Positions 8,020 to 63,980 of a DNA stretch of 64,000 nucleotides are shown here, piece after piece. The notes beneath the pieces were generated by a model. It saw only the letters and a program-made list of their open reading frames with translations. It was not told the origin of the DNA and did not search any database. The DNA comes from Octopus sinensis. Its lineage: Eukaryota. The stretch covers positions 3,782,001-3,846,000 of the forward strand of contig NC_043024.1 in the NCBI RefSeq assembly GCF_006345805.1, written 5' to 3'. The translations under genes and the position numbers were made by a program. The stretch's first letter is position 1. Each line of letters starts with the position of its first letter.

Positions 8020-8610
8020 TTTCCTCTTTGTCTTCCCCCACCCTCACTTTTTCTGTTTCCTCTCTCCTATTTACTTCACTCTCTCTTTTCCTCTCTCCTT
8101 GAACCCTTTTTTGTCTCTTTTCCTCTACACTCATCTCCCTTATCTTTTCTTTCTTCCTCAACTTTACTATCTCTCTCTTTCCACACCTTAACTTCTCATA
8201 TCTCTCTCTCTCTTTCATGTCTCCCTCTTCCACCCCTTTCTCTATTCTTCTCCCCCATCACATCTCTATCTCTCCTCCTCCACCCTCTCCTCTCTCCTTC
8301 CCTCCTTCCCCATCTCATCTCTATCTTCTCTCTCCCCTCTCCTCCTCCTCCCTGTCTCCTTCCCCATCTTATCTCTATCTCTTTTCTCTCCTCTCCTCTC
8401 TTCCCCATCACTGTATTCTTTTTCTCCTATCTCATCTCTATCTCTTCACTCTCATCCCCCTTTCTCCCCCTTCTCTCCCTCTCCCTCCTTTCCCATCTTT
8501 ATTTCTTTCTCTTCCCCTCTCTTCCCTCCTCCCCCTTCCATCATTCTCTGTATTCTTCTCCCCGCATCTCATCTATATCTCTTCTCTCTCATCCTCCCCC
8601 CTCTCCCTGT
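8020..8610 (+). repeat. About 600-nt polypyrimidine (CT-rich) tract ending at the exon a acceptor
   Basis: Almost exclusively C/T on the + strand; it generates the spurious L/S/P ORFs at 7954-8826. Confidence 0.9.
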
Positions 8611-8613
8611 CAG

Positions 8614-8697
8614 TCTGCCATGGGTTACGTGTATGGTGAAACAGACAGAGACAACTATTTGTTACGGAACCACACCAATGGTAAACTGAAGAGTCAG
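8614..8697 (+). CDS. PTGS-like: COX/PTGS-like gene, internal coding exon a (84 nt, phase 0-0): SAMGYVYGETDRDNYLLRNHTNGKLKSQ
   Basis: Long pyrimidine tract plus CAG acceptor (8611-8613); GTAAGG donor at 8698. The 28 aa align without gaps to the recalled PTGS2 segment [28 protein letters not shown], also an 84-nt exon. Confidence 0.88.
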
Positions 8698-12924: not shown

Positions 12925-13599
12925 AGAATTTGTCCATAGAGCAGCGGAAGAATATTATTTTCTCAGATGAGTCATCCTTTACCTTATTTCTGACCAGCAG
13001 CTGAGTATATGTTTGGAGACAGCCAAAAGAAGCATTTGACTCAGACTGCCTTCTTCCAACTGTTATTCATGGAGGAGGATCTGTGGTGATCTGGGCGGGT
13101 GCTATATCCTGGAAATCCACAGGCCCTATGGCTTCCCTTCAGGGCACAATTAATAGGCAAGACTATTTAAGCATTTTATCTGATCAAATTCATTCTATGG
13201 TTGCGGAACTGTTTCTGGAGGGAAACGTAATCTTTCAGGATGATAATGCACCAATTGACACAGCTAAAGTTGTTACTGAATGGCATGAAGAGCATTCTAA
13301 TGAAGCTGAACATCTTATCTGGCCACCACAGTCCCCAGATCTCAATATTATTGAACATTTATGGTGCATTTTAGAAAAACAAATAAGGTACCGATATCCT
13401 CTACCGTCATCACAACATGAACTAGAGACTGTTTTAGCTGAAGAATGGACAAAAATTCCTTTGGAAACAATTCAAAGTTTGTACGAGTCCATACCTCATA
13501 GAATTCAAGCTGTAATTACTGCCAAAGGCAGTCCTACCCCATATTAAAATAAATTTGCTTGAAATTTTAAGGTGTTACCATTATTTTGTCCAACCCCTG
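12925..13599 (+). mobile_element. 5'-truncated Tc1-like transposon (DD36E transposase C-terminal half plus right TIR)
   Basis: Reads IIFSDESSFTLF (stop) ...HGGGSVVIWAGAISW...FQDDNAPI...WPPQSPDLNIIEHLW...AKGSPTPY*. Right TIR aggtgttaccattattttgtccaacccctg is followed by TA (13600-13601). Confidence 0.92.
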
Positions 13600-20098: not shown

Positions 20099-20345
20099 AT
20101 CATAAATGGTGAGGAGTGGCCTCCCTTTGTATTTGAAAGCCCGGTTGACATGCAATATCCTACGGGATTACCCCAAACATCCCAATTTGCTCTTGGGTAT
20201 GAATATTACAGCTTACATAGTGGTCATCTGATGTGGTCAACCCTGTGGCTCCGTCAGCACAATCTGTTCTGTGATATCCTGACTGTTGAACATCCAGACT
20301 GGACTGACGAACAGCTGCACCAAGCCGCAAGAACTGCTGTCTTAG
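20099..20345 (+). CDS. PTGS-like: COX/PTGS-like gene, coding exon b (247 nt, phase 0-1): IINGEEWPPFVFESPVDMQYPTGLP...WLRQHNLFCDILTVEHPDWTDEQLHQAARTAVL
   Basis: tttcacag acceptor and G|gtaagt donor. Gapless match to PTGS IIDGEMYPP...[33 protein letters not shown]; same length as the recalled PTGS2 exon 7. Confidence 0.95.
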
Positions 20346-21301
20346 GTAAGTTCTTCATCTTCACTTTATGTAGCATATCTAGAAATGCTCAGGATTATGA
20401 GGCTCCACTCTGTCTTAGCCTCACCACCTCCCTATAACTTTGCTCCTTCTGGAACCTGCTGGAAAAGCTATCAAAAATATCTTCTCCCTCTATCTCCTTT
20501 CTCTTTCTCTCTCACTCCTGTCTCTTTCTTTCTTTTTCCTTCTTTCATTCTTTCTCTCTCTCTTTCTCTCCCTCTCTCATTTTCTCTTTCTCTCTCTCCT
20601 CTCTTTATCTTTCTCTCTTTCTCCCGCTCAACCTCTCCCTGTTTCATTCTCTCTCCTCTCTCTACCCTCTCTTTCTCCCTCTCATTCTTTCTCTTTCCTT
20701 CTCTCTTCCTCTCCCCTCCCTATCTCTCCCTCCCCCTCTCTCGTTCTCACTCTTTCTCTATCCTCTCTCTTTTCCCTCTCCCTCCTCCTCTCTCCCTCTC
20801 CCACTCCCCTTTCTCTCATTCTCTCTCCCTTTCCCTCCCCCCTCTCCTTTTCCAGCAGTCATTAAGTAGACTATGAATACATACTGACACATGCTCACAT
20901 ATATCTTTCACCTGTTTCTGTCATTAGATGATGGCCATGCTGGGGCACTGCCTCAAAGAATTTTAGTCAGACGAATCGACCTCAGCACCTTTTTGTCTTT
21001 GAAGCATGGTATTTATTCTGTCAGTCTCTTTTGCTGGACTGCTAAGTTTACAAGGATGTAAACACTCCAGCACTGATTGTCTAATGGTGAGGGGTCAAAC
21101 ACAAAAACACACACATGGATATATATGTATAAATCTATGGAGCCCTAGTAATCCATTACAGCACTTACCTAACCTACCTAATCGTTTAGATCACCTGTGA
21201 ACTACTCCTAGTTTTTCTCCTTGGAATGTGGCAGAAGTTGTTCTCTGCACATTTTCAGTGTTTATTGCTCCTCAGCATCTGCCACATACAAAAACTATCT
21301 T

Positions 21302-24423: not shown

Positions 24424-24710
24424 CTATGAACATAAAGATTATTGTGGAGGAATACATCGCCCACATGGCCCGTTACTACTACAATTATGTCTACACTCCG
24501 GAGGCTGTATTCCAAGATGGTGCCCAGTGCAAAGAATTCATGCTGGAAGAGTTCAAGCTGCTTTTACATTGGCACCAAATGTTACCAGACCAAATTGCCT
24601 TCAATGGAACCGCTTACGACATGAAAGACTTTCTCTTCCAGTCACAGTTTCTCATTCAATTTGGAATCGGTCCTTATGTTGAGGCCCTCATTAAACAGTC
24701 TGCAGGAAGG
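24424..24710 (+). CDS. PTGS-like: COX/PTGS-like gene, coding exon c (287 nt, phase 1-0) containing the proximal heme His: (A)MNIKIIVEEYIAHM...EEFKLLLHWHQMLPD...EALIKQSAGR
   Basis: ttgtccag acceptor and AGG|gtaagt donor. Gapless match to PTGS ETIKIVIEDYVQHL...EFNTLYHWHPLLPD...ESFTRQIAGR; same length as the recalled PTGS2 exon 8. Confidence 0.95.
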
Positions 24711-28918: not shown

Positions 28919-29063
28919 GTCACTCACCATAACCATGGTCCTGCAACTATACTCCATGCCAGACAAGCCCTACTCCATGCCAGGACATTACGACTCCAGT
29001 CCTACAACAATTACCTCAGGCATTTCAAGTTGAAAACTCCAAAGACGTTTATTGAGCTGACAG
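28919..29063 (+). CDS. PTGS-like: COX/PTGS-like gene, coding exon d (145 nt, phase 0-1): VTHHNHGPATILHARQALLHARTLRLQSYNNYLRHFKLKTPKTFIELT
   Basis: gcaacag acceptor and ACAG|gtaagc donor. Matches PTGS VAGGRNVPP...[27 protein letters not shown], one codon shorter, frame preserved. Confidence 0.92.
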
Positions 29064-29074
29064 GTAAGCTGGTA

Positions 29075-29500
29075 CCTCTCCTATTCCCTCTTCTCTCTCT
29101 CTCTCTCTCTTTCCATCTCTCCCATTTCCCTCTTCTCTCTTTCTCTCTTTCCATCTCTCCCATTCCCTTCTCTCTCTCTCTCTCTTTCCATCTCTTCCAC
29201 TCCCCTCTTCTCTCTCTCTCTCTCTCTTTCCATCTCTCCCATTCCCCTCTTCTCTCTCTCTCTCTTTCCATCTCTCCTATTCCCTTCTCTCTCTCTCTTT
29301 CCATCTCTCCCATTCCCCTCTTCTCTCTCTCTCTTTCCATCTCTCCCATTCCCCTCTTCTCTCTCTCTCTCTTTCCATCTCTCCTATTCCCTTCTCTCTC
29401 TCTCTTTCCATCTCTCCCATTCCCCTCTTCTCTCTCTCTCTTTCCATCTCTCCCATTCCCTTCTCTCTCTCTCTTTCCATCTCTCCTATTTCTCTCAATT
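29075..29500 (+). repeat. Pyrimidine minisatellite (about 31-34 bp unit ctttccatctctcccattcccctcttctctctct) immediately after exon d
   Basis: Roughly a dozen tandem units are visible; they extend the exon d ORF into a spurious SLSL/FPS tail. Confidence 0.9.
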
Positions 29501-29885
29501 TGTAAATTTCCTCCTATCCACCCACCCATCCATCTCTAACAAATCAAGCAATCGCATGCTGGTCCCTTCATTGGCTGTTCTTCAAGTAGCTGTTGTCTGA
29601 AGTACACTGGATGAGATCTCAGGTAAAGCAAAACAGATGGAAAAATATCAACTCAACCTCGCCCAACCGATCCAAATTGTTTTAATCCTGCAATTTTTTT
29701 CTATCCTTTCTTTCATATATCAGGTGTGGATGTGTGGTAGGAAGCTGACTTCCCAACCACATGGTTCCAGTTTCAGTCCCACCGTGTGGCACCTTCAGCA
29801 AATGTCTTCTACTATAACTTCGGTCTAACTGAACGAAGCCTTTTGAGTGGATTTGGCAGACAGAAATTAAGAGAAGGTCTTAAGT

Positions 29886-33976: not shown

Positions 33977-34365
33977 GTGACTGGGCCACAGCAAAGGAAC
34001 TAGAAGAATTGTATGGTGATGTGGAAGCAGTGGAGTTCATTATTGGTGTACTCTGTGCTCGCAGAGCTCCTCATGCCATGTTCAACCTGATGGTGCAAGA
34101 GGCTGGCGCACTGCTCTCCTTACAGAGCCTCCAGTCCAGTCTCTTGTACATGAAGGCCAGAGGACTGTTAGACAACTACGGCAGTATCGTTGTCAACAAC
34201 ATAGTAAGTACGGCCAGTTATGCAAACCTGATCTGCAGCAACATCAAACAGCCGTGTCCACCTGTCACTCTCTTTGTCCCTTGGTGGGATCATTATTATG
34301 AAGAGTCTTTTAATTTGGCTGAATGGGATGCTGAAGAAAAAGGCTGCGAATTGAGCGAATTCTGA
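33977..34365 (+). CDS. PTGS-like: COX/PTGS-like gene, last coding exon (phase 1, ends TGA): (G)DWATAKELEELYGDVEAVEF...EAGALLSLQSL...LICSNIKQPCP...CELSEF*
   Basis: tttttcataaatccag acceptor. Matches PTGS EKEMSAELEALYGDIDAVELY...VGAPFSLKGL...NTASIQSLICNNVKGCP; the Ser530 equivalent and the C-terminal Cys pair are retained. Confidence 0.95.
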
Positions 34366-36277: not shown

Positions 36278-36289
<12 letters not shown>

Positions 36290-36354
<65 letters not shown>

Positions 36355-36470
36355 GTTACTATAATATAAAATATTAATATATGTATATATATATATATGT
36401 ATATAATATATAGTATATATATAATAGATATTTATAATAATATATATATGTAATATATAATATATATATG

Positions 36471-36503
<33 letters not shown>

Positions 36504-36506
36504 GTA

Positions 36507-36540
<34 letters not shown>

Positions 36541-36743
36541 TATATATGTAATATATATATAATATATATATGTATATGTATATGTATATGATATATATAT
36601 ATGTATATATATGTATATTATATATATTATATATATGTATATATATAATATATATATATTATATATATGTATATATATTATATGTATATAATATATATAA
36701 TATATATATGTAGATATATATATGTAATAATATATAATATATG

Positions 36744-36774
<31 letters not shown>

Positions 36775-36931
36775 GTATATATAATATATTATATTTATAG
36801 ATATATATATGTTATATATATATAATATTATATATATATATGTATATATAATATATGTATAATATATATATATATGTATATATATATAATATATGTATAC
36901 TTATATATATATGTATATATAGTATAATATG

Positions 36932-36965
<34 letters not shown>

Positions 36966-36978
36966 TATATGTATATGA

Positions 36979-37009
<31 letters not shown>

Positions 37010-37037
37010 ATATAATATTATGTTATATATATATATT

Positions 37038-37068
<31 letters not shown>

Positions 37069-37088
37069 GTTATTATATATATATCTGT

Positions 37089-37123
<35 letters not shown>

Positions 37124-37170
37124 GTAATATATATAATATGTATATATATATATATATATATAATATATGT

Positions 37171-37204
<34 letters not shown>

Positions 37205-37379
37205 TATATATATATGTATATATATATACATATGTATATATATGTATATATATATATATGATATATATATATATATATATATATTGTAGATATATTTATA
37301 TATATATATATATATATATGTATTATAGATATAATGTATATATGATATATATATTGTATATATATATAATAATATATGT

Positions 37380-37411
<32 letters not shown>

Positions 37412-37474
37412 AATATAATATATATGTATAAGTTATATATAATGTATATATATATATATGTATATATATATATG

Positions 37475-37505
<31 letters not shown>

Positions 37506-37590
37506 GTATTATAAGGAAGTCATATATATTATATGTATATATATATATGTAGTATAGATATATATAGTATATATATATATAATATATATA

Positions 37591-37621
<31 letters not shown>

Positions 37622-38010
37622 TATATTATGTATATATATATGTAATATATATATATATATTATATATACGTTTAAAAGATATTTGTTGTGCAAGATTTTT
37701 TATGTGAAGTCGTGGTGTTGGGAAACAGATATTGTTATACTTCGGAATTGTCATATTGCCAGTTTAGCCATAAAAAACACACGCACTATATATTTGGTGT
37801 TATTTTGCTTCAGTGATATTTATTTTTTACTTTGGCCGAAATAAATAAGATTAATGTAAAAAATAAATATCACTGAAGCAAAATACACACAAATATATAG
37901 TGCGTGTGTTTTTATTGGCTAAACTGGCAATTGACCATTCGAATAATAACAATATGTAATATATATATAGATCTATATAATGTAATATATAATATATATG
38001 TATAATATAC

Positions 38011-38041
<31 letters not shown>

Positions 38042-38206
38042 ATATATATGTATATATATATATATGTAATATATATATATATATATATAATTGTATATAT
38101 ATATTATATATATGTGTATATATATATATATGTATATATATATATGTATATATCTATATATATATGTATATATATATATAATATATATATATACTAATAT
38201 ATATGC

Positions 38207-38278
<72 letters not shown>

Positions 38279-38598
38279 TATATAATGTACTATAATATAT
38301 TATATATATATTATATATATATATATGTAATATTGTTATATATATAATGTATATATATAATGTATATATATATATATATATAGATAATGTATATATATAT
38401 ATATAATGTATATATATATATATATGTATAATATATGTATATATATATATGTATATATATATATGTATATGTATATATATATATATGTATATATATATAT
38501 AGATATATAAATAATATTATATATATTATGTATATACTATATATGTATATAATATGTATATATATATTATGTATATATATATATATGTAATATATATG

Positions 38599-38629
<31 letters not shown>

Positions 38630-38699
38630 GTATATTATATATGTAATATATATATGTAATATAAAATTATGTATATGTAATTATATATATATTATATAG

Positions 38700-38734
<35 letters not shown>

Positions 38735-38797
38735 ATGTAGATATATATATATTATGTATATATAATATATATAATATATATATTATATATATATATG

Positions 38798-38828
<31 letters not shown>

Positions 38829-38969
38829 ATATATATATATATATAATATATATTATAGATATATATATATTATATAATATATATATATATATAATATATT
38901 AAATATATATATATATATATAATATATAATATATATATATAATATATTATAGCATATATATAATATATC

Positions 38970-39040
<71 letters not shown>

Positions 39041-39108
39041 CGTATAATATATATGTATATATATATATTGTATATATATATGTATATTATATAGTACCTA
39101 TATAGTTA

Positions 39109-39142
<34 letters not shown>

Positions 39143-39202
39143 TATATATATATTATATATGTATTATATATATTATATATAAATATATAGTATATATATA
39201 TA

Positions 39203-39241
<39 letters not shown>

Positions 39242-39320
39242 TGTTATATATATATATAATATGTATATGTATATGTATATTATATATATATATAGTATAT
39301 ACATATATCTATATATATAC
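36290..39320. repeat. About 3-kb degenerate (TA)n/(TATG) array with an embedded inverted repeat at 37729-37955
   Basis: Direct reading of the sequence; source of all the Y/I-rich ORFs. Confidence 0.95.
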
Positions 39321-40017
39321 ATAAACGATGATGATGATGATGATACAATGGGCCTCTTTCAGTTCCTGTCTACCAAATCCACTCACAAGTTTTTGGTTGG
39401 CCCAAGACTATAGTAGAAAAGACCAGGGTGCCACACAGTGGGTCTGAACCCAGGACTATGTGGATGGGAAGCAAGCGTCTTACCATACTGGTATGCCTGC
39501 ACTTATACACCCACACAAACATAGAGTAGTAATAGGGATTCAAAGAATCAGACAAATCTTACATTAAGCTCTCCTCAAAGTGCATGACTGTGGTTGAAAT
39601 TAGGGTCAACCTTCATATTGTTCTGAAACCCCAGAAGACACAATGGTGGAGAGAATGTGTATAAATAGAACAGATAAGAGAAGTGTGGTGAGAGAGTAGA
39701 TGTTTATTCCATGTTTACAGCTGTTTCATAAGTTATTGTTATGTTACATCAACAATTATGTACATATTAAGTGAACATATAAATATATCTGTTATCTTTC
39801 ATCTTGTTTCAGTCATTTGACTGTGGCCATGCTGGGGCACTACCTTGAGGGGTTTTAGTTGAACAAATCAACCCCAGGACTTCTTTCTTTTTTTAAGTAC
39901 TTATTCTACGTCTTATTTGCTGAACTACTAAGTTATGGACACAAACACACCAACACCAAATGTCAAATAGTAATGGGAGACAAACACAGATACAAAGAAA
40001 CGCACACATATGATACA

Positions 40018-49214: not shown

Positions 49215-50464
49215 CAGGGGTTGTACAAAATAATGGAAACACCTTAAAATTTCAAGCAAATTTATTCTAATATGGGGTAGGACTACCTTTGGCAGTAATT
49301 ACAGCTTAAATTCTACAAGGTATGGACTTGTACGAAGTTTGAATTGTTTCCAAAGGAATTTTTGTCCATTCTTCAGCTAAAACAGTCTCCAGTTCTTATA
49401 GTGATGATGGTGGAGGATAAATAGAGTGGGGTAAAGACCTACAGAATTGGTCCCTAGAATAGTGGAAGAATGTTATTTTCTCAGATGAATCATCCTTTAC
49501 CTTATTTCCAATGGCCAGCCGAGTATATGCACCAAAAATTTTCAATAATATTGAGATCTGGGGACTGTGGTGGCCAGATAAGATGTTCAACTTCACTAGA
49601 ATGTTCCTTGTGCCATTCAGTAACAACTTTAGTTGTGTGAATTGGTGCGTTATCATCCTGAATGATTGGGTTTCCCTCCAGAAACAGTTCCAAAACCATA
49701 GAATGAATTTGATCAGATAAAATGCTTAAATAGTCTTGACTATTAATTCTGCCATGAAGAGAAGCCATTAGGCCAGTGGATTTCCAAGATATAGCACCCG
49801 CCCAGATCACCACAGATCCTCCTCCATGAATAACAGTTGGAAGAAGTCAGTCTGGGTCAAATGCTTCTTTTGGCTGTCACCACACATATACTCGGCTGGT
49901 CATTCTGTAGGTCTTTACTCCACTCTAAATGCTTTGCAATGTGCGTTTTTGAAAGTAGTGGTTTTATGATTGCAGCCCTCACTTGAAATCTGGCTTTGTG
50001 CAGCTCCCGAGCAGTTTTTGTGGAAACTGGATTCTCAAGGTGGTCATTAAGCTCTGCAGTAATTTTGGGAGCTGTACTTTTGTGATCCTTTCTAACAATT
50101 CGTGTAAGAGTCTGACAGTCCCTATCTGAAAGTTTCAGTTTTCTTCCAGAGTTTTGTTTCGATGAGGAGGTTTTTCCCTCTTTCTCAAAGGCTGTCATTA
50201 CTTTCAAGACAGTACTTCTTGATACACCAAACAATATGGCTGTTTTCATTATGCTAGTGCCTGCCAAATGAGCACCAACAATTTGACCTCTTTGAAAGTC
50301 CAATAGATCTGTCATTTTAATGAATTTTAATTACCTTTTTCTGATGATATCTGAAAAGAAACAGCAATTTTAGCAAAACATATTAAGCAACACTAATAAT
50401 AAATAAAAAAAAACAAGCTTGAGGCTCTGATGCTAGGTGTTTCCATTATTTTGTCCAACCCCTA
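49215..50464 (-). mobile_element. Near full-length (1250 bp) Tc1-like transposon, DD36E, defective and internally rearranged
   Basis: 30-bp TIRs caggggttgtacaaaataatggaaacacct / aggtgtttccattattttgtccaacccct(a) with TA on both flanks. The transposase starts at 50315 (MTDLLDFQRGQIVG...GRKLKLSDRD) and includes QDDNAPIH...WPPQSPDLNIIE. Confidence 0.93.
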
Positions 50465-61092: not shown

Positions 61093-62869
61093 ATGTAACG
61101 GTAGAGGTTACCAGTTGTAAGCGATGAAAGATTTGTTTTTGTAGCGATGCCTGTTTTGGTGCAACATCGGGATCGCCAGTTTGGAGCAGTTAATTCTTGG
61201 GAAGGCTGCAATTCTTTTGTTCGGGGTCAGCAATTGTAACTGTTAAGTTTTTAGTTGAAGTCGAGGGTCACCAATTGTTACGGTTAGGTTTTAATTAGTG
61301 TAGTTACCAATTGTAACGGGTAAGATTGATTAGGTCAGCAGTTATAACGATAAAAAATTTGTTGTTATAATTGCATACTTTAGGATGTGAAAGATGAACA
61401 ATGCATAAAGTTTTAAGGAAATATTTATTTACCGTTACGTTACAATACCTTGCCTCGACGGGCAGGTTATGATAAATCCAAAAGCATACGAAGGAAAGTT
61501 TGTGTTTGTGTCCTCTTCATTGTTTAGTAGTAATTACAGAGAGAGATAGAATGATGTTGTAAGAGAACAGATTTAGAGCTAGTGAGAGTTGAAGGGTTGT
61601 AGGTGTTGTCTCACAGTTGCTGACAGTGAACTTCATCTCTCCCTCTGACCAAGGTTCTAGCTGGTCATCCAGACTTCGTTCTCGCTGAGTTGTCACCGAA
61701 TGATTAACTGGTTGAGTTATCACCAGGTGACTGAACTATCATTTTGCTTGGGGTTTATGCTTTTATAACTATCCAGAAGGATAGACATATCATTGAAAAC
61801 AACAGATTTAGTTGGTGGTCTTGTTATCTCAATTCTAGCTTTTGGTGAGGTTATAAGGGTCAAGTGGTGAAGACATTATGAAGACATTTCGGCCTAGCTA
61901 AAGACAATCTGGCAGATGTAAAACTGCTGTTAGAGAAAAGCCATTGTTCCACCGTGAGAAAAATTCTGTTGAACTGTTAATTTAAATTTGGCTATGGTAG
62001 ATTGAATCCACTTGATGCATGCAAGATCTACTACAGATAGATAGATAAATGGATAGATAGATAGATGGATAGATAGATAGGTAGGTAGGTAGGTAGGTAG
62101 GTAGGTAGGTAAGTAGGTGGGTAAGTAGGTAGGTAGGTAGGTAAGTAGGTAGGTAGGTAGGTAAGTAGGTAGGTGGGTAGATAGATAGACAGATTTCTTT
62201 ATTAGCCACACGGGGTTCGACACAGAGAGGACAATACAATGTAGAGTTTTTCTTTTCGAGGTGGGGCGAAAACAAATAAAAAAGGGACAACAAAATCGTT
62301 GGGGCGTATAAAAAATCGAAATGGTAGTATAAAAAACAGAGTTCCCAAAAGTGGGGAGGTGTAACCATGGAAAGAAAAACCTACGAAAAAACCACAGTAA
62401 CCTTGGGCAATAGCGTAATACGAAAACACATTAGAATAAGTTACTATCTTTTCCCTTTCTTTTCTGGTTCATAGGATTATGCTCAAGGTGGTTCCGTCAT
62501 TCATATGCGCCATCCTTGCTACATTCACCCAGATAGATAGGTAGGTAGGTAGAGAGATAGATGGATAAGTGAATAGATATGTTTCTTTATTAGCCACACA
62601 GAGCTGCACACAGACGGGACAGATTACAAAGTAGAGCTTTTCTTTTTTGGGGAAAAAAAGGTGGGGTAGGTTGTCGATCAAAAGGGGTCGTAAAAGGGAA
62701 AAAAGAAAAAAAGGAAAAGAAACAAAAGAAAAAAAAAGCGATCAATAGGGATCGTGTATCGCGGTGTCATGATGTAAAGTGTAAAGGAAAAAGCAGATAA
62801 GGTTTATCCGTAGGACGAAAAGCCTACGGAAAAGACCACGGTAACCTCGGTCAATATTGTTACATGTTA

Positions 62870-63980
62870 CCATTATATTACCGCCTATTACTTGTCAAGC
62901 TTCAAGCATATAGGTTCCATCCGGATATTGTACGATGGGTTGGTGCTTTCCTCTCAGATCGCTCCTTCCAAGTCCAAGTTAATGGTTCGCGGTCCGACGT
63001 CTCCAGTGCGAGCAGTGGCGTGCCTCAAGGTTCAGTACTTGGGCCCTTATTGTTCTTAGTCTTCATAAATGACTTGCTCAACGACCTCACGCAACACACC
63101 CTTCTATTTGCCGACGATGTCAAACTGGTCGCTCCTCGCGGTGATATAGAGGATCTTCGTCGATGCCTCCACCAAATTTGGAGGTGGTCTAACGAATGGG
63201 ACCTGTGTCTGAACGTGTCAAAGTGCTGTCATCTGCCTGTTGGCTCTCCTCCTGCAACTCAACTTGATTTCGAGCCGGGTCGTCTGCTGCTGGAGAGGAC
63301 CGATTAGGTAAAGGACCTGGGTATCTTGGTGGATTCCTCCTTTTCGCCTTCGGCCCAGTGCGTCCATGCTGCCAACAAAGCATGCGGAATTCTGTTCTTG
63401 ATTCGACGGTCATTCGGAATGCTCACAGCAGCCATTTTCCTACCGCTCTATGTCACGCTGGTGAGACCCTTATTGGAGTACGGGATTCAAGCCTCTTCTC
63501 CTTATCTCTTCAAAGACATACAGCATCTCGAAAGAGTCCAGAAGCTGTCTTGGTTTCAAGCATTTGTCTTATGAAGAAAGGCTGAAGACGCTCGACTTTT
63601 ATTCTCTAGAAAAACGCCGACGCCGTGGTGATCTCATTCTCGCTCACAACATCATAAGCGGAAAGTGTAACCTCTCGAAAGAGCTGTTCTTCACTCCTGC
63701 TCTAGAGCGTCGGCTGCGGGGTCATTCCGAAAAGCTCTATCTGCGACGATTTCATCTCAATCGAAGGAGAGGGGCTTTCTCCGTCCGGGTTGCGGATCCG
63801 TGGAACAAGCTGCCAGACGAGATGGTGAAGATGCCGACGACCGCTTTGTTCAAAGTCTCCCTTGACCTCAAGTGGCCTGAACTCTTTACATGAACACCAC
63901 CCTGTACATAACTCCATGTCCCCCTACATGGCCTTGCTTTTTGCTTTTTGAGCCAAAAATTAACTAACTAACTAACTAAA
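62870..63980 (+). mobile_element. 5'-truncated CR1/L2-group LINE (RT domain to 3' end), defective
   Basis: SGVPQGSVLGPLLFLVFINDL, LFADDVKL, VKDLGILVD, YVTLVRPLLEY, LSYEERLKTL..YSLEKRR.RGDLI. Premature TAG at 63305-63307, deletion/frameshift near 63545-63560, (TAAC)n tail at 63961-63977. Confidence 0.93.

What the first reader, a model, noticed from the sequence alone, without database searches (positions are those of the whole stretch)
24564..24575. Intact COX-like gene that lacks the catalytic Tyr385: candidate cyclooxygenase pseudoenzyme or allosteric subunit
Seen in sequence: exon c aligns without gaps to PTGS, and EFNTLYHWH reads EFKLLLHWH. The Tyr385 position is Leu (TTA 24564-24566) while His386, Trp387 and the proximal heme ligand His388 (CAC 24573-24575) are kept. 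All five exons are stop-free, in frame and have canonical splice sites, so this does not look like a decaying pseudogene. Established: the Tyr385 radical abstracts the C13 hydrogen of arachidonate, and Y385F PTGS loses cyclooxygenase activity but keeps peroxidase activity. PTGS works as a dimer with catalytic and allosteric halves. A-to-I editing cannot turn TTA into a Tyr codon. Inference: the protein is either a peroxidase-only lipid-hydroperoxide enzyme, an oxygenase with different chemistry, or a dedicated non-catalytic partner that regulates a canonical COX paralogue. Any of these would be an unusual branch of eicosanoid signalling. I cannot tell whether this has already been described.
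Basis: partly seen in the sequence, partly recalled or inferred. Interest (0 to 1): 0.88.

Follow-up and report, generated by a model that had tools for sequence, protein, structure and literature searches.

The report
Octopus cyclooxygenase paralogue lacking catalytic tyrosine
The window holds the last five exons of an intact, evolutionarily constrained octopus gene that is a highly diverged copy of cyclooxygenase and has lost the tyrosine (and a glycine) needed to make prostaglandins, while a normal cyclooxygenase gene exists elsewhere in the genome; what the diverged copy does is unknown.

Summary
Window 24424-24710 is exon 8 of a 10-exon gene. It aligns to COX-1/COX-2 without gaps (E 5e-17). 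The Tyr385 position is Leu (TTA 24564-24566), and His386, Trp387 and His388 are kept.

The five exons in the window splice into 383 aa. These are 100% identical to residues 209-591 of XP_036370478.1, "prostaglandin G/H synthase 1-like" of Octopus sinensis.

Leu385, with the same TTA codon, is also present in O. bimaculoides and O. vulgaris. dN/dS between O. sinensis and O. bimaculoides is 0.125, and 0.084 for the window exons (p = 5e-18 against neutrality). It is therefore neither an assembly error nor a pseudogene.

The protein is far more derived than one substitution suggests. It differs at 40 of 116 columns that are ≥95% conserved in canonical animal COX. These include Gly533Ser, Tyr504Ile, Gln203Asp, Asn144Asp, the 120-129 and 541-552 dimer-interface segments, and the C-terminal -xEL tail.

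A canonical COX with every catalytic residue exists in Octopus (A0A6C0PP88, 37% identical).

Canonical cyclooxygenase chemistry is very probably lost. Whether the protein is a peroxidase, a lipid or heme binder, or a partner subunit is not resolved. The changed interface argues mildly against a partner role. Tyr385-less COX-like genes also occur in several arthropods and in sipunculans.

The parts
8614..8697 (+). Exon 6 (84 nt, phase 0/0), residues 209-236: SAMGYVYGETDRDNYLLRNHTNGKLKSQ
   Evidence: tblastn with COX-2 and with XP_036370478.1. Splice sites cag|TCT and CAG|gtaagg.
20099..20345 (+). Exon 7 (247 nt), residues 237-318 plus the first base of codon 319. Contains the WLRQHN helix.
24424..24710 (+). 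Exon 8 (287 nt), residues 319-414. Contains Tyr348 (TAC 24453-24455), Tyr355 (TAC 24474-24476) and the EFKLLLHWH motif.
   Evidence: A Patella canonical COX exon has the same size and phase.
24564..24566 (+). TTA = Leu at the position of the catalytic Tyr385 (own residue 366)
   Evidence: The codon is identical in O. bimaculoides.
24573..24575 (+). CAC = His388, the proximal heme ligand, retained (own residue 369)
28919..29063 (+). Exon 9 (145 nt), residues 415-462 plus the first base of codon 463
33977..34365 (+). Exon 10 coding part, residues 463-591 and stop TGA at 34363-34365. The protein ends ...GCELSEF, without the -xEL tail of canonical COX.
34117..34119 (+). TCC = Ser530 (the aspirin-acetylation serine), retained
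34126..34128 (+). AGC = Ser at the position of Gly533. This is a second change that is known on its own to abolish arachidonate cyclooxygenation.
   Evidence: PMC12756642.
34039..34041 (+). ATT = Ile at the position of Tyr504

Best explanation
The window carries exons 6-10 of a real, intact gene of Octopus sinensis (XP_036370478.1, 10 exons, about 70 kb). It is a very diverged paralogue of cyclooxygenase (prostaglandin G/H synthase).

Shown:
- It keeps the whole COX architecture: signal peptide, EGF-like domain, membrane-binding helices and heme-peroxidase-type catalytic domain.
- It keeps the COX fold and most COX intron positions.
- It keeps both heme histidines (His207, His388) and Tyr348, Tyr355, Glu524 and Ser530.
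- It has Leu for the radical-forming Tyr385, Ser for Gly533, Ile for Tyr504 and Asp for Gln203.
- It has lost the Asn144 sequon, has remodelled interface segments, and lacks the -xEL ER-retrieval-like tail.
- It is under strong purifying selection between two Octopus species.
- A canonical COX is encoded elsewhere in Octopus.

Inferred:
- It cannot start arachidonate oxygenation by the tyrosyl-radical mechanism, so it is not a prostaglandin G/H synthase.
- It most likely still binds heme and a lipid in the old channel, and acts as its own homodimer. Both sides of the 126/127 to 541/543 interface contact have changed together.
- Its role is then either a peroxidase-type or hydroperoxide-handling enzyme, or a non-catalytic lipid/heme-binding protein of the secretory pathway.

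I do not favour a subunit of the canonical enzyme.
For: - Identity and structure of the gene.
- Ungapped alignment with Leu at 385.
- Leu385 and the TTA codon shared by O. sinensis and O. bimaculoides, and Leu385 in O. vulgaris.
- Selection: 53 synonymous against 27 non-synonymous differences, dS 0.157, dN 0.0196, omega 0.125. Omega is 0.084 for the window exons. Binomial p = 4.6e-18. Intron identity of 85-93% agrees with dS.
- Fold: AlphaFold model with pLDDT 83.5 and pTM 0.84. Best PDB matches are COX-2 and COX-1, TM 0.85/0.91, rmsd 2.4 Å. Pfam An_peroxidase E 4.9e-34.
- Intron positions: five of nine introns match a Patella canonical COX gene in position and phase, and exons 8 and 9 have the same sizes, 287 and 145 nt.
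- Derived state: 40 of 116 near-invariant COX columns are changed, against a median of 1 in canonical COX and 4 in the octopus canonical paralogue.
- Canonical paralogue with Gln203, His207, Tyr385, His388, Ser530 and Gly533, ending ...SNEL.
[quoted passage not shown] G533A abolishes cyclooxygenase activity but not peroxidase activity. Positions 126/127 cross-link to 543/541 across the dimer.
Against: - No expression, protein or activity data were available. No transcript-derived contig of this gene turned up, whereas a probable cephalopod canonical COX (P0216) is seen in 14 transcript-sized contigs.
- Retention of the heme histidines is not statistically remarkable. About 34% of invariant positions are changed, so keeping 4 of 4 by chance has p≈0.19. 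Heme binding is therefore an assumption.
- Gln203Asp and the changes at positions 291 and 295 could also have removed peroxidase activity.
- The homodimer argument rests on two short segments and on a region the model predicts poorly (pLDDT <50 at residues 119-135).
- An Arg at the Arg120 position is alignment-dependent. BLAST pairs Arg114 with Arg120, while MAFFT pairs Lys108.
Confidence: 0.6

Rival explanations
1. Dedicated non-catalytic (allosteric, 'Eallo-like') subunit. The Tyr385-less protein would heterodimerise with the canonical octopus COX and tune its activity. This would be a natural counterpart of the engineered Y385F/Native heterodimers.
For: - A canonical paralogue co-exists in Octopus.
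- Engineered Y385F/Native PGHS-2 keeps >90% of Vmax, with the Y385F subunit acting as Eallo. G533A/Native is as active as native (PMC12756642).
- The EGF domain, a major part of the dimer interface, is kept, together with Tyr355, Glu524 and Ser530 of the channel.
- Purifying selection.
Against: - Both partners of the documented cross-talk contact are replaced. The 126-129 SPP motif is gone, Ser541 is Met and Pro542 is Lys, and W545-G552 is rewritten.
- The protein is only 37% identical to the canonical paralogue.
- The Asn144 sequon and the -xEL tail are lost, so co-residence in the ER is not assured.
- The genes are not adjacent. There is no second COX gene within 87-90 kb.
Confidence: 0.13
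2. Oxygenase with different chemistry. The protein would still oxidise fatty acids, using another radical site or direct ferryl chemistry, and would make non-prostaglandin oxylipins.
For: - The heme ligands and the hydrophobic channel framework (Tyr348, Phe381, Leu384, Trp387, Phe518, Ser530, Leu534) are retained.
- New Tyr residues appear at positions 291 and 359.
- The protein is under selective constraint.
Against: - Among the aligned best hits of the exhaustive search, almost all of the bacterial, fungal, plant-type and animal members keep the Tyr (LYHWH or LYRWH). The few exceptions are uncharacterised COX-like sequences.
- No family member lacking the Tyr is known to me to oxygenate fatty acids.
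- Tyr504, the alternative radical site of COX-2 (my knowledge), is also lost.
Confidence: 0.1
3. Non-functional relic or annotation artefact: a recently inactivated gene copy, or a sequencing error at the codon.
For: - No transcript-derived sequences of this gene were seen in the protein collection.
- A third of the family-invariant residues are lost.
Against: - The same Leu codon occurs in two independent genome assemblies, and the same residue in a third species.
- All 10 exons are open, with canonical splice sites, in two species.
- Omega is 0.125, p = 4.6e-18.
- A last-exon orthologue with the same splice phase and tail exists in a more distant organism, 43% identical.
Confidence: 0.03

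Closest known systems
Canonical cyclooxygenase / prostaglandin G/H synthase (vertebrate COX-1 and COX-2; Octopus vulgaris A0A6C0PP88; other mollusc COX)
   Same: - Same domain order and fold (TM 0.85-0.91 to COX-2 and COX-1 crystal structures).
- 35-38% identity over the full length.
- Shared intron positions and phases.
- His207, His386, Trp387, His388, Tyr348, Tyr355, Glu524 and Ser530 are kept.
- The tail motif P-x-W-x3-YEES is shared only with cephalopod canonical COX. This suggests a duplication within the cephalopod lineage.
   Different: - Tyr385Leu, Gly533Ser, Tyr504Ile, Gln203Asp and Asn382Lys.
- Loss of the Asn144 sequon.
- Shortened and rewritten 120-135 region, and 541-556 rewritten.
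- No -xEL C-terminus.
- 40 of 116 near-invariant positions changed.
Engineered Y385F and G533A PGHS-2 subunits used in Mutant/Native heterodimers (Eallo models)
   Same: They lack the same two determinants of cyclooxygenase catalysis. Such subunits fold and bind heme, and G533A keeps peroxidase activity. They can serve as the allosteric half of a dimer (PMC12756642).
   Different: Those are single substitutions in an otherwise native protein with a native interface. The octopus protein is 63% different from its canonical paralogue and has a changed interface. No dimer data exist for it.
Divergent invertebrate 'COX-like' proteins in public databases: sipunculan Aspidosiphon; Macrobrachium, Timema, Ladona, Aquatica, Frankliniella
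   Same: These are animal COX homologues that lack Tyr385. The residue there is Phe in Macrobrachium, His in Timema and Gln in Ladona. In Aquatica, Frankliniella and Aspidosiphon the whole motif is unrecognisable. [quoted passage not shown] 2015). That paper is cited in PMC8062024 but is not held in the library.
   Different: Most of these have also lost one or both heme histidines, for example Aspidosiphon, Timema, Aquatica and Frankliniella. The octopus protein keeps both. They are not close relatives of it (≤33% identity, separate long branches), so the losses look independent. None has a known function. The sipunculan Phascolosoma 'cyclooxygenase-like protein' from the same survey keeps the Tyr (MYHWH).
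Fatty-acid alpha-dioxygenases and bacterial/fungal heme dioxygenases of the same superfamily
   Same: Same superfamily (PF03098), with distant fold matches (TM about 0.55).
   Different: They keep the catalytic Tyr (LYRWH). They lack the EGF and membrane-binding domains.

Membership tests
Cyclooxygenase / prostaglandin G/H synthase (EC 1.14.99.1) | Signal peptide + EGF-like domain + membrane-binding domain + heme-peroxidase-type catalytic domain, with the COX fold | tested here: met
   Full-length alignment to canonical COX. Pfam An_peroxidase E 4.9e-34; EGF is weak (E 0.007, below cut-off) but the Cys pattern is intact. The model matches COX-2 and COX-1 structures at TM 0.85/0.91.
Cyclooxygenase / prostaglandin G/H synthase (EC 1.14.99.1) | Catalytic Tyr385 (tyrosyl radical abstracting the 13-pro-S hydrogen) | tested here: not met
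   Leu (TTA 24564-24566) in an ungapped alignment, and the same in three Octopus species.
Cyclooxygenase / prostaglandin G/H synthase (EC 1.14.99.1) | Proximal His388 and distal His207 heme residues | tested here: met
   His369 and His195 of the octopus protein align to His388 and His207. His207 is encoded upstream of the window.
Cyclooxygenase / prostaglandin G/H synthase (EC 1.14.99.1) | Distal Gln203 of the peroxidase site | tested here: not met
   Asp (LFATQADHLSHLF against FAFFAQHFTHQF) in both species.
Cyclooxygenase / prostaglandin G/H synthase (EC 1.14.99.1) | Channel residues Arg120, Tyr355, Glu524, Ser530 and Gly533 | tested here: inconclusive
   Tyr355, Glu524 and Ser530 are kept. 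Gly533 is Ser. Arg120 depends on the alignment: Arg114 by BLAST, Lys108/Arg108 by MAFFT.
Cyclooxygenase / prostaglandin G/H synthase (EC 1.14.99.1) | N-glycosylation sequon at Asn144 (required for activity) and a C-terminal ER-retrieval-like -xEL | tested here: not met
   Asn144 is Asp. The only sequons are NHT at 227 and NGT at 379. The tail is ...LSEF, against -xEL in most of the canonical COX compared; the exceptions were Daphnia and its sister sequence and the flatworm Macrostomum. The requirement itself is from PMC8062024.
Cyclooxygenase / prostaglandin G/H synthase (EC 1.14.99.1) | Gene structure shared with animal COX genes | tested here: met
   10 exons. Introns 2, 4, 7, 8 and 9 are identical in position and phase to Patella vulgata COX, and exons 8 and 9 are 287 and 145 nt in both.
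Cyclooxygenase / prostaglandin G/H synthase (EC 1.14.99.1) | Conversion of arachidonate to PGG2/PGH2 | not testable with these tools
   Needs recombinant protein and an activity assay.
Pseudoenzyme / dedicated allosteric COX subunit (hypothetical class) | Physical heterodimer with a catalytic COX, with a conserved dimer cross-talk interface (120-129 loop to 541-543) | tested here: not met
   The interface segments are not conserved. Physical association is not testable here.

The most novel reading that the evidence does not exclude
Octopuses (and perhaps cephalopods generally) have evolved a genetically hard-wired non-catalytic COX subunit. It would pair with the canonical COX, or with itself as a lipid-sensing heme protein, to regulate eicosanoid synthesis. 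This would be the first natural counterpart of the engineered Eallo-Y385F/Ecat-Native heterodimer, and would show that the allosteric half of COX can be split off into a separate gene.
Probability: 0.12. Interest if true: 0.85.

Novelty: new variant of a known kind. Interest (0 to 1): 0.5.

Why it matters
Tyr385 is close to universal across the animal, plant, fungal and bacterial members of this oxygenase family that were compared. A copy that lost it, and Gly533 too, yet stays under strong purifying selection next to a normal COX is a natural experiment on what a COX scaffold can do without cyclooxygenase chemistry.

There is also a practical point. Automatic names ('prostaglandin G/H synthase 1-like', and 'synthase 2 isoform X2' for an isoform of the orthologous gene in O. 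bimaculoides) invite misuse of this protein as 'the octopus COX'. One cephalopod analgesia study judged NSAID-target conservation from cephalopod PGS alignments and did not mention the Tyr385 change (PMC9953149). Work on NSAID targets or prostaglandin synthesis in cephalopods should use the canonical paralogue (A0A6C0PP88 type).

Tried and rejected
- The word-indexed protein search with exon 8 alone found nothing. The spliced 383 aa was needed.
- The neighbour-joining tree (578 columns, 200 bootstraps) put the octopus COX-like protein on a very long branch at the base of animal COX. This is almost certainly long-branch attraction, so the time of duplication is not resolved. The only hint of a cephalopod-specific duplication is the shared P-x-W-x3-YEES tail.
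- I could not fetch the canonical octopus COX locus, because there was no exact-sequence record. There is therefore no dN/dS comparison with the paralogue and no map position.
- The residue at position 385 in the more distant orthologue could not be determined. That orthologue is P0132, run ERR3431203, organism unknown, and only its last exon lies on a 1-kb contig.
- I considered arguing that retention of the heme histidines shows selection for heme binding. I rejected this as not significant, given that 34% of invariant sites are lost.
- I searched for an alternative, mutually exclusive exon 8 encoding Tyr. There is none.
- Seven full-text searches found no description of this octopus paralogue or of a natural Tyr385-less COX subunit. 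Havird et al. 2015 is not held, so prior mention there cannot be excluded.

Full report
**1. What is in the window**

The window is eukaryotic DNA with long introns. It is identical to part of Octopus sinensis chromosome record CM016886.1 (assembly GCA_006345805.1). Window position equals position in locus L002 minus 45368.

| Exon | Window coordinates | Length |
|---|---|---|
| 6 | 8614-8697 | 84 nt |
| 7 | 20099-20345 | 247 nt |
| 8 | 24424-24710 | 287 nt |
| 9 | 28919-29063 | 145 nt |
| 10 | 33977-34365 | includes stop TGA at 34363-34365 |

- All internal boundaries are AG...GT and the phases fit.
- The spliced 383 aa are 100% identical to residues 209-591 of XP_036370478.1, 'prostaglandin G/H synthase 1-like [Octopus sinensis]', 591 aa.
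- The first five exons (208 aa) lie upstream of the window.
- The whole gene has 10 exons of 76, 120, 141, 129, 158, 84, 247, 287, 145 and 389 nt, spread over about 70 kb.

**2. The observation**

- Exon 8 aligns to COX-2 and COX-1 crystal-structure sequences over 94 residues without a gap (E 5.4e-17). EFKLLLHWH lies opposite EFNTLYHWH.
- The codon at the Tyr385 position is TTA at 24564-24566. His388 is CAC at 24573-24575.
- There is no second, Tyr-encoding copy of this exon in the window or in the 87-90 kb loci of O. sinensis and O. bimaculoides.

**3. Not an error and not a pseudogene**

- The O. bimaculoides orthologue (XP_014768111.1, 96% identical) and an O. vulgaris fragment (CAI9741821.1) have the same motif.
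- In O. bimaculoides the nine codons of the motif are identical at the nucleotide level, TTA included.
- I rebuilt both coding sequences from genomic DNA. Both translate exactly to the annotated proteins.
- Nei-Gojobori counts are 53 synonymous and 27 non-synonymous differences. This gives dS 0.157, dN 0.0196 and omega 0.125.
- Omega is 0.084 for the exons in the window and 0.246 for the N-terminal exons.
- A binomial test against neutral expectation gives p = 4.6e-18.
- Intron identity of 85-93% agrees with the dS value.

**4. How far it has diverged**

It is 35-38% identical to every canonical COX, including the one from Octopus.

In an alignment with 46 canonical animal COX proteins, 116 columns are ≥95% identical. 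The octopus protein differs at 40 of them. The canonical median is 1, and the octopus canonical paralogue differs at 4. In ovine COX-1 numbering, the residues compare as follows:

| Group | Kept | Changed or lost |
|---|---|---|
| Heme site | His207, His386, Trp387, His388 | Gln203Asp, Asn382Lys, Phe at 291→Tyr, Val295His, Val447His |
| Cyclooxygenase site | Tyr348, Phe381, Leu384, Tyr355, Glu524, Gly526, Ala527, Ser530, Leu534 | Tyr385Leu, Gly533Ser, Tyr504Ile, Phe205Leu, Leu334Thr, residue 523 Gln, residue 359 Tyr |
| Other features | – | Asn144 sequon lost; 120-135 region shortened with the SPP motif gone; Ser541Met, Pro542Lys, Trp545-Gly552 rewritten; C-terminus ...LSEF instead of -xEL |

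- The residue equivalent to Arg120 is alignment-dependent.
- The AlphaFold model is confident (pLDDT 83.5, pTM 0.84), except at residues 119-135 and 200-207.
- The model superposes on COX-2 and COX-1 structures with TM 0.85/0.91.

**5. Gene-family context**

- An exhaustive HMMER search of 1.84 billion representatives found no relative above 50% identity outside the protein's own cluster.
- I aligned the best hits from that search to the motif. Almost all carry the Tyr, as LYHWH in animals and LYRWH in microbial and plant-type dioxygenases.
- Other exceptions are COX-like proteins of Macrobrachium (Phe), Timema (His), Ladona (Gln), Aquatica, Frankliniella and the sipunculan Aspidosiphon. Most of these have also lost one or both heme histidines.
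- A search with a canonical mollusc COX found a canonical Octopus vulgaris COX (A0A6C0PP88, 612 aa). It has Gln203, His207, Tyr385, His388, Ser530, Gly533 and an -NEL end.
- So a Tyr385 paralogue co-exists. It is not within 87-90 kb of this gene.
- The tail motif P-x-W-x3-YEES is shared only by the COX-like protein, the Octopus canonical COX and a probable second cephalopod canonical COX (P0216). This hints at a duplication inside the cephalopod lineage.
- The NJ tree is dominated by the long branch and does not resolve the duplication.
- A last-exon fragment from sequencing run ERR3431203 is 43% identical. It has the same splice phase and the same VPWW..YEESF..AEE..F tail. This shows an orthologue in a more distant organism.
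- That orthologue still has the canonical WWRPSTFGG segment. The rewriting of residues 541-552 is therefore later than the duplication.
- Five of the nine introns match a Patella vulgata canonical COX gene exactly in position and phase. Intron 6 is shifted: 84+247 nt in octopus against 189+142 nt in Patella, with the same sum.

**6. Mechanism**

Established biochemistry, from the 2025 JBC review PMC12756642:
- Tyr385 abstracts the 13-pro-S hydrogen, and Y385F/Y385F PGHS-2 has no cyclooxygenase activity.
- G533A abolishes cyclooxygenase activity but not peroxidase activity.
- Y385F/Native and G533A/Native heterodimers are nearly as active as native enzyme, with the mutant subunit acting as the allosteric half.
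- Cross-talk runs through the 120-129 loop. Residues 126/127 face 543/541 of the partner subunit.

What follows for the octopus protein:
- It carries two changes that are each inactivating on their own. I conclude, by inference, that it does not make PGG2/PGH2 by the known mechanism.
- Whether it keeps peroxidase activity is open. The two histidines are there, but Gln203 and residues at peroxidase-site positions 291 and 295 have changed.
- Keeping four residues when a third of invariant sites have changed is not statistically telling.
- However, both sides of the interface contact have changed in this protein. In a heterodimer both contacts would be mismatched, whereas in a homodimer the two changes face each other.
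- The lost -xEL tail and the lost Asn144 sequon also separate it from the canonical enzyme's biology. PMC8062024 describes both as conserved or required.
- I therefore prefer a self-associating heme/lipid-binding protein, peroxidase-type or non-catalytic, at modest confidence. The heterodimer model stays as the main rival.

**7. Novelty**

- The gene is machine-annotated in three Octopus genomes under names that imply an active COX.
- Seven full-text searches found no description of the missing Tyr.
- One cephalopod analgesia paper compares cephalopod PGS sequences with vertebrate COX. It reports conserved channel residues and does not note the change (PMC9953149).
- Divergent 'COX-like' homologues of invertebrates are a known category (Havird et al. 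2015, cited in PMC8062024; the paper itself is not held).
- I rate this a new variant of a known kind. It is interesting mainly because it keeps the heme ligands, is strongly constrained, and sits beside a canonical paralogue.

**8. Limits**

- There are no expression or activity data.
- The taxonomic breadth of Leu385 beyond the genus Octopus is unknown.
- The timing of the duplication is unresolved.
All its anchor residues checked out, and every conclusion was re-derived with database sequences.

Noticed in passing
window 8033-8632, 20483-20882, 29083-29532: In the 89.7-kb O. sinensis locus only three tracts are ≥85% C+T over ≥200 nt on the coding strand. All three lie within 140 nt of an exon of this gene: before exon 6, after exon 7 and after exon 9. 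The third contains a 69/107-nt tandem repeat at 29093-29490. The tract before exon 6 is also pyrimidine-rich in O. bimaculoides. The rough chance of this placement is about 1e-4. It may be splicing-related or a repeat insertion bias.
   Followed up: partly
window 36278-39323: An (AT)n microsatellite of about 3 kb (about 1570 copies, G+C 0.14-0.17) begins 1.9 kb downstream of the stop codon.
   Followed up: no
window 13083-13547 (+), 49857-50315 (-), 62864-63307 (+): Transposable-element remnants. There is a Tc1/mariner-type DDE_3 transposase fragment inside intron 6, and an HTH_Tnp_Tc3_2 transposase N-terminus and an RVT_1 reverse-transcriptase fragment downstream of the gene. No ORF of 130 aa or more in the window matched any other cellular protein family.
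   Followed up: partly
L008 (Patella vulgata COX gene) versus L002: Intron 6 of the COX gene sits at a different place in Patella (exons 189+142 nt) than in the octopus COX-like gene (84+247 nt), with the same sum. This is a case of intron sliding, or of loss and gain. From memory, 84+247 is also the vertebrate arrangement.
   Followed up: partly
Database proteins P0021, P0025, P0026, P0031, P0079, P0007: Independent Tyr385-less COX-like proteins exist in Macrobrachium (Phe), Timema (His), Ladona (Gln), Aquatica, Frankliniella and sipunculans. Most have also lost a heme histidine. Loss of the catalytic Tyr in animal COX homologues is therefore recurrent.
   Followed up: partly
L003 (Logan ERR3431203 contig, 113-544): A last-exon orthologue of the COX-like gene from an unidentified organism. 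It is 43% identical and has the same acceptor phase and tail, but it keeps the canonical WWRPSTFGG segment that Octopus has rewritten.
   Followed up: partly
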